Source: Amoeboradix gromovi X-113
Lineage: Eukaryota > Fungi > Sanchytriomycota
NCBI GenBank assembly: GCA_018985225.1
Contig: JADGIF010000638.1
Coordinates: 1-5,642 of the forward strand
Length of the DNA: 5,642 nucleotides
Direction of reading: 5' to 3'
In this document: positions 406 through 5,642 of the stretch, piece by piece
Layout: each line of letters opens with the position of its first letter
Position numbering within the stretch: the first letter of the stretch is position 1
Notes under the pieces: model-generated
The model's database searches: none
Seen by the model: the letters and a program-made list of their open reading frames with translations, nothing else
Told to the model about the DNA's origin: nothing
Position numbers and translations under genes: made by a program

Positions 406-1218
406 TTACTTTTGATGCCTATTTACCAGCTCAAGAGCTTTAGTTAGCAGTTTCTCACAAGTCACCAAGTCATCATATTCTACAGCAGATGAGATGTGCT
501 TGCATAGTTTTTGAATTTCGCGTTGATCTTCTACATAGGTGCTGCTCATCTTTACGTTTGAAATAACTGGATCATAAACCGGTACATGCTTATGCGTAGC
601 GGGACTCTTAACTGGTTTCTTTTCAATTTGCTGGATTTTTGGCGACGAAATTGGCTCATCTTGAGGTTCAACTTGAGTTACTGGCTGAGCAGTAAAATCC
701 ATCATAACAGGGGCGCTGGGCTGTATGATCGAGCTATCTATGGTGTTGGATTCACTTTTAAATGGTTCAGAGGTCCCTTTTGTCTTTAAATCACTTAGAA
801 TAGTTCTTGATCGAAATTTCGAGAACTTGGCCATTTCTTTGTATTTTTCAATGTTTTCAATATTTTCGAAAACAGATAAGCACTCTAGCAATACACTTGC
901 GTTGAGATATTGCTTGGCAGTAATCGCAGTTGGTTGAATTTCATCTTGTTTGACACTGAGAGTAAACAAACCAATTGCCTGTTGTTCCATTTGTTCGCCA
1001 GTCTTCTTTTGGTCTAAATCCGGTACACTTGGCTTGTTTTGCTCTAAATAAGAAATGATTTTAGTTGAAAATACTTGCTCTATGGAAATGCACTGCATAG
1101 CAGTATGGAGCAAGATATAATAAGATATGTTAGGCAAATTAGTATATTCATTCGCTAAATTGATAAATCTTTTATACTGCACGCAACTTGTTGGAACTTC
1201 AATCTCAAGGCTCTGCAT
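406..1218 (-). CDS. VTA1: Vta1/LIP5 homolog (Vps4 activator, ESCRT/MVB sorting), 270 aa
   Basis: C-terminal EIQKLCKHISSAVEYDDLVTCEKLLTKALELV closely resembles the Vta1 VSL domain (QKxxKxAISALxxEDxxTAxxxLxKALxLL). The N-terminal ~150 aa has Vta1 MIT-region-like segments (FINLANEY, ISYYILLH, YLEQNK, AKQYLNASVLLECLSVF, KFSKFRSRTILSDLK). A Pro/Ser/Gln-rich linker joins them. The ORF-track start at 1221 is TTG; the first ATG is 1218-1216. Stop TAA at 408-406. Confidence 0.9.
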   Translation of the reverse strand: MQSLEIEVPTSCVQYKRFINLANEYTNLPNISYYILLHTAMQCISIEQVFSTKIISYLEQNKPSVPDLDQKKTGEQMEQQAIGLFTLSVKQDEIQPTAITAKQYLNASVLLECLSVFENIENIEKYKEMAKFSKFRSRTILSDLKTKGTSEPFKSESNTIDSSIIQPSAPVMMDFTAQPVTQVEPQDEPISSPKIQQIEKKPVKSPATHKHVPVYDPVISNVKMSSTYVEDQREIQKLCKHISSAVEYDDLVTCEKLLTKALELVNRHQK

Positions 1219-1644
1219 CAAAAATTAAAAAAATAAACATAATATAATTTATTTTCTTTATGAGCCGAAAGCAAACATACCCTTGATTTTAAGTGGATCA
1301 AGTCTCTAATAGAAAAGGGTGAAATAATGGATAACTTGGATACGCAAATTTAAGTAGACGTAAATTGATCGTAGAGAAAGCGGTTATGCAGCTAAGCAGA
1401 ATAAATAATTTTGATTGAATTGTAATCCAAGAGCATTCTTTCGTAATTAGGCTGAACATGATGCTCTAGAGCACAGATTATATAATACCAGTCCAAATGT
1501 AGTAGGACCATCATCAGAAAAAGACATATAAGCTATATTTCCATTGCTGATCATACAAATAGCTTATTCAGATTTTGTTGCTTTTGGTTGATTTTCATGA
1601 CTGGGTGAAATCTAGTTTGAAACCATAAACAAAAAAAGTGGATC
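1219..1644. promoter_or_regulatory. Divergent intergenic region, probable shared or back-to-back promoters for VTA1 and the formin
   Basis: 426 bp between two divergent ATGs. Very AT-rich next to the VTA1 start (1221-1260) and A-rich just upstream of the formin ATG (aaacaaaaaaagtggatcATG). No specific sites can be assigned. Confidence 0.5.
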
Positions 1645-4600
1645 ATGTTTCCATCTCTTTCTTCATTATTTGGATCGTATTCGAGCACAAACGAGTCACT
1701 GAAAAAAGGGCAGATTCAGGTTAAGAACATGTCAATTACAACTGATGATATATGGACTATGGATCAACTTACAGATTATTTAAATGTTCAAGCACCGTCT
1801 CAACAAATTCAACTAAAACCCTTAGACCTGAAGACAGAACTAGACATTATAAATATAACTTCTCAAGTCTGGGTGTCTGGAGCACCGTGGTCTCGTAGAA
1901 CGGAAACTCAAATATATCGTAACAACTTTAAAGAGTTGGGAGAGTTTTTAAGTAAAAAGAAGAAGAACTACTTGATATTCAATCTTAGCGATATAGATTA
2001 TCCTCTTGATTTCAAAGTTATTCATCAGGAGTTTCATTATCAACTTATTGAAATATTTCAATTAATGCGGGCAATTTCTGGTTGGATTAAACTTAATGAT
2101 CAACATATTGCTATAGTTCATTGCAGCAATGGTATAAAGCATACGAGTATACTTGTTTCTGCGCTTTTAAAATATTTGGATATCTTTCCCACAACATTAG
2201 AGGCATTTGATTACTTTGTTCTTCGCCGTTGTCCCTTTGACCAGGACTGGATATCTTGCAAACACACCCGGTATATCCATTATATTAATGACATATTCAA
2301 CTTTAATGGCCAGGTCCCCAATCCTAATCTAATCGTTTTACGTAAAATCATTCTTAACAGTGTGCCAATGTACCAATTTAGTCCAATTATTCCAATCATT
2401 GAAATTATATCGAATAATAAGAAGATTTACTCCAGTTCAGATAACATATTTATTGATGAATACAATATCGTTGTCAACTTCACTGATGACATTTTATTGG
2501 ACCAAGATGTTGAAATAAAATTTCTACATGATCAAGAGATTCCTATAAACATCGTCAAGTTTTCATTTAATACTGGGTTTACAAGCGCGGGTTTAGTTAG
2601 ATTACTGCCGAGTGAGTTAGAATTTCCAAATCACAAGAATTGCACCTTTCACAGTGATTTTAGCATAGATTTAGTGTTCATGGAAACCTTGAACGTTAAG
2701 AAGCTCAATTACTCCAAGTATTTAGACGTGTTGCTGCACAAGCAACTATATCAACTGTCATTGGCAATTCCTATACCTTTGGATTTAGAAAAGTGTCATA
2801 TTTTGCAATCTCAATCATACAACAAGATCAGTTATGAGTTAGCTCTAAAGCTGGCGAACAACGATCTTCATTTAGCTACGGAACTACTATTATCGGTCTT
2901 CAGTAAAATTAACAATCAATTACAACAGGAATTGGTTGAAATGGGCAAAAAACACTTAAAGCATAAGGTTGTTAACAAACTGAAGAGATCAAGCGGCTAT
3001 AACCAGTTCATTCAAGCTGACGAGGATGGTTTTATTGATTTGTTTGAAACTCCTCATGTCAGTGAGGATGAAATAAATTCTCCACCAAGCACAAAGACTA
3101 CGATTAAGGGTATCAATACCATTAATACTCGCAAAAAGAGAAGAGACAACAAATATGCAGATTATGCTCTTGTTAACTCACCAGATAAGGATTTAGAGGA
3201 GAAAAGCAACTCCTTACTAGATGATACTCCAACAGATGAGAGCAAGAACAAAATAGTCGACCAGGAGAAGATTATTGACAAGCTAGATGATACTCCAACA
3301 GATGAGAGCAAGAACAAAATAGTCGACCAGGAGAAGATTATTGACAATAAAGTAGAGCACTTAGAGGCCGTAAAAGATAACAAAGTGGGCATAAATGCAG
3401 GTATGGATACAGTAGAAGTCAGTAACGCGCTTGAAAAGAAGATGGACAAGGATATTATAGAAAAGATTAATTTATTAGAAAGGCATAGGAACAACAGTAT
3501 AAATGAAAAGAGAAATGACCTGGATGCCGAAGAAAAAGAAGCAATAGCACCCGCACTAGAAGAAGCAAAAGACACGCCAACTGTATCAGATTCGAGAAAA
3601 GACTCGCCCTCTAATTCCTCATCCAATGTCTCTACCATTTCGAGATCACTCACCATCAACAGAAGAAAGAACAGGGATGCCACAATAGACCTGTCTACCA
3701 TAGATAATGCTATGGACATCATAGAGCCTGTAGTGCAACAAACAGGTGTACCACCGCCTCCCCCACCGCCTCCATTTGGTAATATACCACCGCCGCCGCC
3801 TATCCCTGCCGCACCTGGCGTTCCACCACCACCACCACCACCAGGTATGGGACCTGTTGTGAACAAGCCCCGAATACGCAACAAAATGCACTTCGAACAA
3901 CCTGCTACAATTAATAGGAACTCGATATGGGATGGGCCTGAAGATGACTATAAAATAGAAAACAACATGATGCAAGGTAATAGTATCGTAGATTTGGATT
4001 TAAACAAGTTTGAAGATTTATTTTGTGTGACTGAGAATCAGCCAAAGCCTATTGTAAGAACGCCTGTTGTTCAATCCGCTGTTACTACAATATTGGATGT
4101 TAGAAGAGCAAACAATGTAGCTATAGGCCTTAGTAAATACAAGAATTATTCATTTTTAGAGCTAAGAACCATGTTGGCCACTTTTAAAATGGATAATTTG
4201 GATGATTTAATTCACATTCAATCACTCTTACCAAATGAAGAGGATATAAAACTTATCAACAATTTTAAAAGAACCAACAAATCAACAGATGTTGAATATG
4301 GTAAAGCAGAGGAATTCATGATGGTCATGATGGAGGACCCTAATATTGAGCAATTCACTAGCATAATGATTTATAAATCATCCTTTACTGAGCAGACAGT
4401 GCAAATAAAATCTAAATTACAAGAAATTATCAAAGTTTCATCTGAACTGGTCACCAGCAAGGAGTTTAAAATTTTATTAAAAACCGTTTTAAATCTTGGT
4501 AATAGCTACAATAGGCAGCAAATCAAAGGTTTTAAAATCAACAACTTGTTGAAATTGAACACAATAAAATCTTCCGATAAAAAAACTAATTTGCTAAATT

Positions 4601-5190
4601 ATTTATGTCTAATGACTGTTCAAGGATGTCCAGAGATACTTAAATTACCTGATCAATTTTCAGCACTAGAAGAACTGCAGTTTATTAATATGAACGAGAT
4701 CAGCTTGAAGATCAAGCAATTAGATGACGAACTAATTAGAATTGAGAAATACTCACCATTAAATGTTCCATTAGAAATTAAGGAAACCTATGGTGAATTT
4801 GACTACAAAGTTTTTATAACTGAGTTTATAAACAGCAGTATAGATGTAATGGATGATATATTAGATTTGCAAGAGGAATATCAAAGAACTTGGATTAAAA
4901 CGGCATTGTACTTTGGCGAAGATTTACAAGGAGATATAAAAATACCCAGTGATTTGTTTGTTATACTAAATGAGTTTTTTAAGATGCTTCACAAAGCAAA
5001 TAAAGAGAATGAATTAGAACAAGAGAGAATTGAGAGAATGGCTCGCAAAAAACAACTCAGTAATAGACCTGATGACATAGCAAGCGTGTTGACACGAACA
5101 GCTAATGAAGGTACTATAGCTGCTAAATTTATAAACATAAGAAGAGCGGTCGAAGGAGAGGAAGACGAGGATGATTCCTGGAAAGACTAA
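1645..5190 (+). CDS. Multidomain formin: PTEN-like/C2 - UBA-like - FH1 - FH2 - acidic Trp tail, 1181 aa
   Basis: Uninterrupted 3546-nt ORF. An in-frame TGA at 1618-1620 precedes the ATG. Polyproline FH1 is followed by FH2 hallmarks (SIW, FEDLF, ILDVRRANNVAIGL, LLPNEED, AEEF, LNLGNSYN, GFKINNLLKLNTIKSSDKKTNLLNYL, YFGED). PTEN/tensin/auxilin-type motifs lie at the N-terminus. Confidence 0.93.
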   Translation: MFPSLSSLFGSYSSTNESLKKGQIQVKNMSITTDDIWTMDQLTDYLNVQAPSQQIQLKPLDLKTELDIINITSQVWVSGAPWSRRTETQIYRNNFKELGEFLSKKKKNYLIFNLSDIDYPLDFKVIHQEFHYQLIEIFQLMRAISGWIKLNDQHIAIVHCSNGIKHTSILVSALLKYLDIFPTTLEAFDYFVLRRCPFDQDWISCKHTRYIHYINDIFNFNGQVPNPNLIVLRKIILNSVPMYQFSPIIPIIEIISNNKKIYSSSDNIFIDEYNIVVNFTDDILLDQDVEIKFLHDQEIPINIVKFSFNTGFTSAGLVRLLPSELEFPNHKNCTFHSDFSIDLVFMETLNVKKLNYSKYLDVLLHKQLYQLSLAIPIPLDLEKCHILQSQSYNKISYELALKLANNDLHLATELLLSVFSKINNQLQQELVEMGKKHLKHKVVNKLKRSSGYNQFIQADEDGFIDLFETPHVSEDEINSPPSTKTTIKGINTINTRKKRRDNKYADYALVNSPDKDLEEKSNSLLDDTPTDESKNKIVDQEKIIDKLDDTPTDESKNKIVDQEKIIDNKVEHLEAVKDNKVGINAGMDTVEVSNALEKKMDKDIIEKINLLERHRNNSINEKRNDLDAEEKEAIAPALEEAKDTPTVSDSRKDSPSNSSSNVSTISRSLTINRRKNRDATIDLSTIDNAMDIIEPVVQQTGVPPPPPPPPFGNIPPPPPIPAAPGVPPPPPPPGMGPVVNKPRIRNKMHFEQPATINRNSIWDGPEDDYKIENNMMQGNSIVDLDLNKFEDLFCVTENQPKPIVRTPVVQSAVTTILDVRRANNVAIGLSKYKNYSFLELRTMLATFKMDNLDDLIHIQSLLPNEEDIKLINNFKRTNKSTDVEYGKAEEFMMVMMEDPNIEQFTSIMIYKSSFTEQTVQIKSKLQEIIKVSSELVTSKEFKILLKTVLNLGNSYNRQQIKGFKINNLLKLNTIKSSDKKTNLLNYLCLMTVQGCPEILKLPDQFSALEELQFINMNEISLKIKQLDDELIRIEKYSPLNVPLEIKETYGEFDYKVFITEFINSSIDVMDDILDLQEEYQRTWIKTALYFGEDLQGDIKIPSDLFVILNEFFKMLHKANKENELEQERIERMARKKQLSNRPDDIASVLTRTANEGTIAAKFINIRRAVEGEEDEDDSWKD
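1834..2310 (+). other. PTEN/tensin-type phosphatase-fold domain (approx. aa 64-222), probably catalytically dead
   Basis: LDIINIT, YRNNFKELGEFL, NYLIFNLS, W...HIAIVHCSNGIKHT, EAFDYF and RYIHY parallel PTEN LDLTYI, YRNNIDDVVRFL, YKIYNL, HVAAIHCKAGKGRT, EALDFY and RYVYY. Boundaries are approximate. Confidence 0.85.
2317..2685 (+). other. PTEN/tensin-type C2 domain (approx. aa 225-347)
   Basis: Beta-rich segment with LRKIILNSVP, DVEIKFLH, KFSFNTGF and FHSDFSIDLVF, matching the PTEN-C2 pattern (DIKVEFFH, FWVNTFF, FSPNFKVKLYF). It directly follows the phosphatase fold. Confidence 0.8.
2776..2898 (+). other. UBA-like three-helix domain (approx. aa 378-418)
   Basis: DLEKCHILQSQSYNKISYELALKLANNDLHLATELLL matches the UBA pattern L..MGF......AL....ND...A...L. 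The MGF loop is replaced by QSY. Confidence 0.6.
3217..3348 (+). repeat. In-frame tandem duplication, 2 x 66 bp (LDDTPTDESKNKIVDQEKIID[K/N])
   Basis: 3217-3281 is identical to 3283-3347. Only the last base of the unit differs (g3282 vs t3348). Confidence 0.97.
3745..3855 (+). other. FH1 polyproline domain (tracts P8, P5, P7), including a (CCA)7 run at 3823-3843
   Basis: GVPPPPPPPPFGNIPPPPPIPAAPGVPPPPPPPGMGP immediately upstream of FH2; forms a local C-rich island. Confidence 0.92.
3865..5010 (+). other. FH2 actin nucleation/elongation domain (approx. aa 741-1122)
   Basis: Conserved actin-contact Ile (NVAIGL, I827, nt 4123-4125) and Lys (TIKS, K975, nt 4567-4569). GN(Y/F)MN-equivalent GNSYN at 4498-4512. 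Lasso Trp at 3928-3930. Confidence 0.92.
5071..5187 (+). other. C-terminal amphipathic + basic + acidic-Trp tail resembling the WASP/SCAR CA motif
   Basis: DDIASVLTR...IAAKFINIRRAVEGEEDEDDSWKD-stop, with Trp third from the C-terminus after an acidic run. Confidence 0.65.
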
Positions 5191-5266: not shown

Positions 5267-5642
5267 AATTACCCGTCCACGTATCCTCGCATTAATATTT
5301 AAGTGTGCTTGTTGTTTACTAAAACGCACTCCATATATGTTGCTTGCGATTGAAGGTACGTGACATTGCGTGATGCATTTAATTTTCTTCCCAAAGCCAG
5401 CTGAGCAAGACGCTACTAGAAATAAAGTGAAATTTTTCCCTAGTTTGTACAGCGGCTATACGGAATCAGAAGTATTTGAATAGCCGTAAGTGCCTGTTTG
5501 ACACTCTTGCAAATACGTCTAAGATTGTGAAAGACCATTCAAGTTTACTAAATACACTCATGGGGCACCAAATATAAAAACTAGACTAACTCGTTTTTAA
5601 AGGAGGTGCTCCATACGGAGGAAATCATTAATAAAAGATCTT

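What the first reader, a model, noticed from the sequence alone, without database searches (positions are those of the whole stretch)
5071..5190. Formin ending in a WASP/SCAR-like CA (Arp2/3-binding) motif: candidate hybrid linear + branched actin nucleator
Seen: after FH2 and a charged helix, the protein ends DDIASVLTRTANEGTIAAKFINIRRAVEGEEDEDDSWKD*. Known: Arp2/3 nucleation-promoting factors (WASP, SCAR/WAVE, WASH, fungal myosin-I, Pan1) end in an acidic stretch with a Trp 1-3 residues from the C-terminus. In WASP/WAVE this follows an amphipathic helix closing with basic residues (WAVE-type DVATILSRRIAVE...DW). Typical formin tails instead carry DAD/WH2-like or basic segments. Inference: this formin may recruit or activate Arp2/3 while FH1-FH2 builds the mother filament or supplies monomer, putting two normally separate nucleation systems in one chain. 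I do not recall a characterised formin with a functional terminal CA motif, but I cannot search the literature.
Basis: partly seen in the sequence, partly recalled or inferred. Interest (0 to 1): 0.85.

Follow-up and report, generated by a model that had tools for sequence, protein, structure and literature searches.

The report
Fungal formin with Arp2/3-binding-like tail
A small group of crawling, alga-parasitising fungi has an actin-filament-building protein (a formin) that ends in a conserved tail resembling the handle other proteins use to grip the filament-branching machine Arp2/3, so one protein may link straight and branched actin growth; binding is untested.

Summary
Observation confirmed. 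Window 1645-5190 encodes a 1181-aa formin (PTEN-like phosphatase, C2, UBA-like, FH1, FH2) of a sanchytrid fungus, probably Amoeboradix gromovi; one orthologue is from Sanchytrium tribonematis. In five orthologues the tail keeps a short hydrophobic helix, a second amphipathic helix (8 of 16 positions invariant, above FH2's 33%), an acidic run and a Trp 1-3 residues from the end. None of about 122 other formins meets that terminal criterion. Related PTEN-formins of Paraphysoderma, chytrids, aphelids and Rozella end in a four-Cys motif, acidic-Tyr or other tails, so this tail is a sanchytrid innovation. It meets the A definition, meets the C definition only in part (the usual Arg three residues after the last core hydrophobic is I/L/V; short linker), and has no WH2. 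Best reading: an Arp2/3-binding CA module (about 0.65) on a membrane-anchored formin dimer; net activation about 0.4, Arpin-like inhibition about 0.2, another partner about 0.35. No formin with a CA tail turned up in the papers searched. Nothing was tested biochemically and no RNA data exist. The scan noted this only on the same window.

The parts
1645..5190 (+). Whole gene, single ORF, 1181 aa PTEN-type formin
1822..2316 (+). PTEN-like phosphatase fold (about aa 60-224); P-loop at 2119-2145 is C-x5-H in all four full-length sanchytrid proteins, not C-x5-R, so probably inactive (inferred)
   Evidence: PDB sequence hits to PTEN E 3e-14; model pLDDT 88, Foldseek 1d5r E 1.6e-18; P-loop list
2317..2688 (+). 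PTEN-type C2 domain (aa 225-348)
   Evidence: Pfam PTEN_C2 E 1e-12
2776..2904 (+). UBA-like three-helix unit (aa 378-420)
   Evidence: Pfam UBA E 0.31 here, E 0.004 in orthologue P0003, both below the curated cut-off; confident helices 381-389, 394-403, 408 onward
3748..3843 (+). FH1, three polyproline tracts (aa 702-733)
3862..5010 (+). FH2 domain (aa 740-1122); conserved actin-contact residues Ile827 and Lys975 present (Arg in Sanchytrium)
   Evidence: Pfam FH2 E 3e-49; Foldseek DAAM1/mDia1 E 1e-11 to 1e-12; residues (equivalence to Bni1 I1431/K1601 from my own knowledge)
5011..5073 (+). Charged helical extension after FH2, not conserved in sequence
   Evidence: 0% invariant; helix to residue 1139 in the model
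5074..5100 (+). Tail helix 1 (aa 1144-1152), pattern [DNG]-[IV]-x-[SE]-[VL]-[LM] in 5 of 5; resembles the start of the WAVE C helix
   Evidence: WAVE rows
5110..5157 (+). Tail helix 2 (aa 1156-1171), amphipathic, invariant G1156, I1158, K1161, F1162, R1166, A1168, V1169, G1171; candidate C helix
5158..5190 (+). Acidic run with Trp1179 (5179-5181) three residues from the end, then stop; candidate A motif
   Evidence: weak Pfam Myo1_CA match E 0.11-0.16 in orthologue P0056

Best explanation
A sanchytrid-specific variant of the opisthokont PTEN-formin whose ancestral C-terminal end was replaced by a CA-type Arp2/3-binding module. Shown here: architecture, intact FH1-FH2, lineage-restricted conservation of two tail helices plus acidic-Trp, no WH2. 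Inferred mechanism: the PTEN-like/C2 unit holds the protein at a membrane; FH2 dimerises and nucleates or elongates a linear filament fed by FH1-profilin-actin; each subunit displays a tail whose Trp and acidic run dock in the basic Trp pockets of Arp3 and ArpC1 while helix 2 lies in the barbed-end cleft of Arp3 or Arp2. The dimer would thus tether Arp2/3 next to a fresh mother filament. Lacking WH2, it should behave like fungal myosin-I or a type II factor (recruiter, weak activator, dependent on actin supplied by FH1, helix 1 or a partner), seeding branches from formin-made filaments at the zoospore's leading edge or at endocytic patches. Probability that the tail binds Arp2/3 at all is about 0.65; that the net effect is recruitment or activation about 0.4.
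For: Tail conserved in 5 of 5 orthologues, helix 2 more than FH2. Trp position floats between -1 and -3 and the acidic linker varies from 9 to 20 residues, as described for A regions (PMC3298513; PMC7274804). Two tail helices predicted, though at pLDDT about 50. By eye, helix 2 aligns without gaps to WASH, N-WASP and WAWH C regions at two core hydrophobics four apart, a following basic pair and a closing hydrophobic; in Sanchytrium all three core hydrophobics are present. Helix 1 of the window shares 6 of 11 residues with a WAVE C helix from the record before Spizellomyces WAVE (rough chance 0.01-0.2 after allowing for positions and templates). Only Pfam match to any tail is Myo1_CA. Arp2 and Arp3 present in both sanchytrids. 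Zoospores crawl with a lamellipodium that sprouts subfilopodia. Searching for terminal A motifs has found a true binder before (Arpin).
Against: No significant profile match to any CA family: Myo1_CA E 0.11 in one of five, nothing in PDB or the Atlas. The Arg found three residues after the last core hydrophobic in the WASP, WAVE, WASH and WAWH rows read is I/L/V here. Phe-to-Trp distance is 16-18 residues in four of five, against 21-22 in the WAVE and WAWH rows read. First core hydrophobic is absent in four of five. No WH2, which class I activators need. 21 of 33 sister PTEN-formins also end in an aromatic residue, so the Trp may be an inherited terminal-aromatic signal for another partner. 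No binding, activity or expression data.
Confidence: 0.4

Rival explanations
1. Arpin-like brake: the tail binds Arp2/3 (probably the Arp3 site only) but, with no WH2 and a divergent C helix, competes with WAVE/WASP. The formin then clears branching around the filament it elongates, turning lamellipodial network into filopodia.
For: Arpin has C helix plus A, no WH2, and inhibits; C-helix sequence alone decides inhibitor versus activator (PMC8810855). Helix 2 departs from activator C helices at the conserved Arg and the first core hydrophobic. Sanchytrid zoospores are rich in filopodia.
Against: No Trp at the start of helix 2 like Arpin W195; helix 1 could extend the helix N-terminally, as in activators, and is contiguous with helix 2 in Sanchytrium. 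A dimer next to F-actin favours type II activation (PMC6057921).
Confidence: 0.2
2. The tail is the sanchytrid form of a terminal acidic-aromatic ligand ancestral to PTEN-formins and binds something other than Arp2/3 (for example a CAP-Gly or adaptor domain); helix 2 is a diverged WH2/DAD-type helix that binds actin for the FH2.
For: 21 of 33 sister proteins end in F, W or Y at -1 or -2 against 7 of 54 other formins; chytrid members often end acidic-Tyr. Helix 2 starts 33-46 residues after FH2, where DAD (35-51) and the WH2-like helix of aphelid PTEN-formins (33-38) sit.
Against: Helix 2 scores at background against DAD, WH2-like and chytrid-tail profiles. Trp is followed by 0-2 residues, whereas CAP-Gly ligands need a terminal aromatic with the free carboxylate (own knowledge). 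No LKK-type WH2 half.
Confidence: 0.22
3. Intramolecular switch: the acidic tail and helix 2 fold back on the basic PTEN-like/C2 or UBA face, as PTEN's own acidic tail does, and gate membrane binding or FH2 activity. The likeness to CA is incidental.
For: The protein has no DID, so it lacks the usual autoinhibition. The N-terminal unit is highly conserved (54% invariant in the phosphatase fold) and carries a sanchytrid-specific P-loop change. PTEN tail-bound structures are top structural matches.
Against: Sister PTEN-formins have the same N-terminal unit without this tail. It does not account for a floating subterminal Trp. Not exclusive with Arp2/3 binding.
Confidence: 0.13
4. Chance look-alike or wrong C-terminus (artefact or hidden short intron).
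For: This genome has 19-nt introns by first-stage notes; several GT-AG pairs 15-40 nt apart exist in the last 400 nt; no RNA run.
Against: Same frame and motif in five genomes at 49-59% identity; DNA confirmed; 0 of 24 other ORFs on sanchytrid-like contigs have such an end.
Confidence: 0.05

Closest known systems
Opisthokont (non-plant) PTEN-formins (Pruyne 2017 PMC5628938; Prostak et al. bioRxiv 10.1101/2020.06.12.142943)
   Same: PTP-C2-FH1-FH2 order; FH2 falls within the clade holding Paraphysoderma, chytrid, aphelid and Rozella PTEN-formins
   Different: Ends in helix-helix-acidic-Trp instead of a four-Cys motif, acidic-Tyr or other tails; P-loop Arg replaced by His; neither paper mentions an acidic tail or UBA
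WASP-family class I NPFs (WASP, WAVE, WASH, WAWH; PMC3298513)
   Same: Polyproline upstream; amphipathic helix, basic pair, closing hydrophobic, acidic run, subterminal Trp
   Different: No WH2; a 380-residue FH2 lies between polyproline and tail; conserved C-helix Arg missing; two helices; shorter helix-to-Trp distance
Fungal type I myosin tail (Pfam Myo1_CA)
   Same: Membrane-binding, F-actin-engaging machine with a terminal CA and no WH2 of its own (own knowledge); weak Pfam match E 0.11 in one orthologue
   Different: Engine is a formin, not a motor; match is far below the curated cut-off
Type II NPFs Abp1 and cortactin (PMC6057921)
   Same: F-actin binding plus acidic motif; dimeric engagement; weak activators that hold Arp2/3 on filaments
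   Different: They bind filament sides; FH2 rides the barbed end and makes the filament
Arpin (PMC8810855)
   Same: C helix plus A at the C-terminus with no WH2
   Different: Arpin has a small globular head, not a nucleator; has a Trp at the start of its C helix
JMY, and SPIN90 with mDia1 and Arp2/3
   Same: JMY joins a linear nucleator (tandem WH2) and a CA in one chain; SPIN90 bridges a formin and Arp2/3 (both from own knowledge; the primary papers were not held; SPIN90-Arp2/3 linear filaments cited in PMC10330494)
   Different: No FH2 in JMY; the SPIN90 link is made by three separate proteins

Membership tests
Formin | FH2 domain with conserved actin-contact Ile and Lys | tested here: met
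Formin | FH1 polyproline before FH2 | tested here: met
Formin | Nucleates or processively elongates actin | not testable with these tools
   needs pyrene or TIRF assay
Opisthokont PTEN-formin | N-terminal PTP-like plus C2 fold | tested here: met
Opisthokont PTEN-formin | FH2 groups with fungal PTEN-formins, not plant class II or Drfs | tested here: met
   FastTree SH 97 for the 68-row clade; IQ-TREE 91/90 for the 21-row set, midpoint root only
WASP-family class I NPF | WH2 (helix plus LKK-type motif) directly before C | tested here: not met
   no Pfam WH2 on any sanchytrid tail; background score against WH2-like profile
WASP-family class I NPF | C region: three large hydrophobics four apart, then 2-3 Arg/Lys, then a hydrophobic | tested here: inconclusive
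   two of three hydrophobics in all five, three in Sanchytrium; basic pair and closing Val present but one position later; compared by eye
WASP-family class I NPF | A region: acidic run with Trp at or near the C-terminus | tested here: met
   5-8 D/E in the last 14 residues, Trp at -1 to -3 in 5 of 5
WASP-family class I NPF | Binds and activates Arp2/3 | not testable with these tools
   single-chain folding only; no complex prediction or assay
Diaphanous-related formin | N-terminal GBD/DID | tested here: not met
   no Drf_GBD or FH3 hit; N-terminus is PTEN-like
Diaphanous-related formin | C-terminal DAD core plus basic run | tested here: not met
   DAD profile from 10 formins: helix 2 is never the best window; window protein p 0.38; one orthologue p 0.02 on helix 1; run after the helix is acidic
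Active PTEN-type phosphatase | C-x5-R P-loop | tested here: not met
   C-x5-H in four sanchytrid proteins; most relatives keep Arg

The most novel reading that the evidence does not exclude
The first formin that is also an Arp2/3 activator: an FH2 dimer builds the mother filament while its two CA tails fill both activator sites of one Arp2/3 complex, with FH1-profilin or helix 1 standing in for WH2, so one membrane-bound protein starts linear and branched actin together. It arose in the lineage that gave up swimming for crawling.
Probability: 0.3. Interest if true: 0.85.

Novelty: new variant of a known kind. Interest (0 to 1): 0.62.

Why it matters
Formins and Arp2/3 are treated as separate nucleation systems that compete for actin monomer and cooperate through third proteins. 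A natural FH2-CA chain would make two open questions testable in one purified protein: where the first mother filament for branching comes from, and whether a CA can work without WH2 when profilin-actin or an FH2-held seed is next door. If it inhibits instead, it is a built-in switch from lamellipodium to filopodium. The tail appeared on the sanchytrid stem, which also lost flagellar swimming and adopted amoeboid zoospores, so it is a candidate molecular correlate of that change. The first test needs only a 40-residue peptide and purified Arp2/3.

Tried and rejected
Tail against PDB sequences, single and profile: no hit to E 10. ESM Atlas on the tail: nothing at 0.9 or above; weak FH2/DAD clusters at 0.84-0.86, then no usable named hit. 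Tail-only homologue search: only itself among 78 candidates, too insensitive to mean anything. More orthologues: JGI metagenome scan gave two distant formins at 24%; profile search gave only P0056 again. DAD, WH2-like and chytrid-tail profiles do not recognise helix 2, so 'just a DAD' was rejected as membership, though kept as a possible origin. First tree run timed out and was replaced. Literature: ten searches found no formin with a CA tail, but phrases written with a space for the slash in Arp2/3 matched nothing, so those were weaker than meant, and most subscription papers are not covered. The las17 row of the Galindo table scores both sanchytrids 0, but also Allomyces and choanoflagellates, so I did not take it as loss of WASP. 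The orthologue on L003 is in pieces and was used piece by piece, not joined.

Full report
Observation. The window holds one long gene, 1645-5190 on the + strand, 1181 codons, next to a divergently read Vta1 gene. Contigs from the only run that holds the locus agree in this stretch. No RNA run is on record.

What the protein is. Pfam gives PTEN_C2, FH1 and FH2. PDB sequence hits add the PTEN phosphatase fold, and folded models confirm both halves (PTEN E 1.6e-18, DAAM1 FH2 E 4.5e-12). A UBA-like unit follows C2. The actin-contact Ile and Lys of FH2 are kept. The nearest named relative, 49% identical, is from Sanchytrium tribonematis; the window's own protein is also an EukProt entry, so the source is most likely the other sequenced sanchytrid, Amoeboradix gromovi (inference). 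PTEN-formins of fungi and choanoflagellates are a described subtype (PMC5628938; bioRxiv 10.1101/2020.06.12.142943); neither text mentions an acidic tail.

Conservation of the tail. Five orthologues were found: the window, Sanchytrium, two full-length metagenome proteins and one C-terminal piece. All keep four elements after a non-conserved charged helix: helix 1 (1144-1152, a loose hydrophobic pattern), helix 2 (1156-1171, eight invariant residues), an acidic run and a Trp at -1 to -3. Helix 2 is 50% invariant against 33% for the adjoining FH2 and 0% for the coil. The model puts helices at 1144-1152 and 1161-1169 at low confidence, as expected for a flexible tail. The acidic-Trp end is absent from about 122 other formins and from 24 other ORFs on the sanchytrid-like contigs.

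Evolution. The five form one clade with full support inside the fungal PTEN-formins. Their relatives end otherwise: Paraphysoderma (Blastocladiomycota, the sister phylum), Amoeboaphelidium, Rozella and many chytrids carry a terminal C-x2-C-x6-C-x-C motif, other chytrids an acidic-Tyr end, and others neither. Aphelid-like members have a WH2-like helix at the distance from FH2 where helix 2 sits. The simplest history is that the sanchytrid stem replaced the four-Cys end with an acidic-Trp end and remodelled the post-FH2 helix; capture of a WAVE-type segment is possible but not shown. The trees are midpoint-rooted and give no donor.

Is it a CA? The A definition is met (PMC3298513; PMC7274804). 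The C definition, three large hydrophobics four apart, then two or three basics, then a hydrophobic, is met in part. Read against the WASH, N-WASP and WAWH rows of that paper's supplement, I1158 and F1162 take the second and third core positions, R1166 and the next residue the basic pair, V1169 the closing hydrophobic; K1161 and G1171 match WASH. Missing are the first core hydrophobic (present only in Sanchytrium) and the Arg three residues after the last core position, which is I, L or V here. The distance from that Phe to the Trp is 16-18 residues in four proteins and 27 in one, against 21-22 in the WAVE and WAWH rows read. Helix 1 is the part that looks like WAVE: 6 of 11 identical to one fungal-type WAVE row, rough chance 0.01-0.2, but it is the less conserved helix. 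These comparisons are by eye. Profile tools give only a weak Myo1_CA match in one orthologue. Helix 2 is not recognised as DAD, WH2 or the chytrid tail motif. There is no WH2, so this is not a WASP-family protein.

How it most likely works. The partner exists: Arp2 and Arp3 are scored present in both sanchytrids, whose zoospores crawl with a lamellipodium bearing subfilopodia. Inferred: PTEN-C2 anchors at a membrane, FH1-FH2 builds a filament as a dimer, and the two tails hold Arp2/3 through the Trp pockets of Arp3 and ArpC1 and the barbed-end clefts (geometry from PMC7274804). With no WH2 the closest working analogies are fungal myosin-I and type II factors (PMC6057921): recruit, activate weakly, rely on another source of monomer. 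I put Arp2/3 binding at about 0.65, split into recruitment or activation (0.4), Arpin-like inhibition (0.2; PMC8810855) and binding without clear effect. Non-Arp2/3 readings take the rest: an inherited terminal-aromatic ligand (21 of 33 sister proteins end in an aromatic), or a fold-back switch on the PTEN-like head.

Novelty and verdict. The formin subtype is known and the CA module is known; their union was not found in ten literature searches, with the limits stated. JMY and the SPIN90-mDia1-Arp2/3 assembly are functional precedents from my own knowledge. I rate it a new variant of a known kind, interest 0.62: real, conserved, lineage-specific, cheap to test, but with the key interaction and its sign unproven. 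Earlier scan notes on this feature come from the same window only and are not independent support.

Noticed in passing
P0017, P0019, P0020, P0021, P0037 and about 14 more relatives: Fungal, aphelid and Rozella PTEN-formins end in an undescribed C-x2-C-x6-C-x-C motif, usually closed by F or W; no Pfam match. Probably a small zinc knuckle; recalls the CLIP-170 end (from memory).
   Followed up: partly
chytrid PTEN-formins P0020, P0024, P0030, P0032, P0033, P0053, P0055, P0057 and others: A separate conserved tail helix ending in a K/R-R-x-S kinase-site-like motif, often followed by an acidic run and terminal Tyr; helix-basic-acidic-aromatic order is loosely CA-like too, but it does not match the sanchytrid helix by profile.
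   Followed up: partly
window 2776-2904: UBA-like unit after C2 is shared with other fungal PTEN-formins (profile scores 17-28 bits in several) and is not mentioned in the two formin surveys read.
   Followed up: partly
window 2119-2145: P-loop is C-x5-H in sanchytrids, while most other fungal PTEN-formins keep C-x5-R and may be active phosphatases, unlike the usual view of PTEN-like formin heads.
   Followed up: partly
window about 3016-3072 (aa 458-476): Conserved island in the otherwise variable linker: an acidic, clathrin-box-like hydrophobic-hydrophobic-D-L stretch followed by invariant T-P-H-x-S. With PTEN-C2 and UBA it hints at an endocytic site.
   Followed up: no
window 1645-1680: The first 11 residues are nearly identical in four orthologues although predicted unstructured; possible amphipathic membrane anchor.
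   Followed up: no
window 3217-3347: Exact 66-bp tandem duplication in the linker; doubled contig depth there suggests it is real.
   Followed up: partly
window 5560-5625: Very high summed contig depth and many loose ends mark a high-copy repeat at the window's 3' end.
   Followed up: no
window 406-1221 (-); L001:21508-22335; L001:7001-8217 and L002:59-963: Vta1 lies beside the formin in the window and 8 kb from it in L001; an acyl-CoA dehydrogenase precedes it in L001 and L002. Partial synteny supports orthology.
   Followed up: partly
L003:28-2385: The fifth orthologue is split over three ORFs, by short introns or assembly errors.
   Followed up: no
P0005: A 2031-aa metagenome formin with many repeats matching Pfam PF10152 (CCDC53, a WASH-complex subunit) before FH2.
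   Followed up: no
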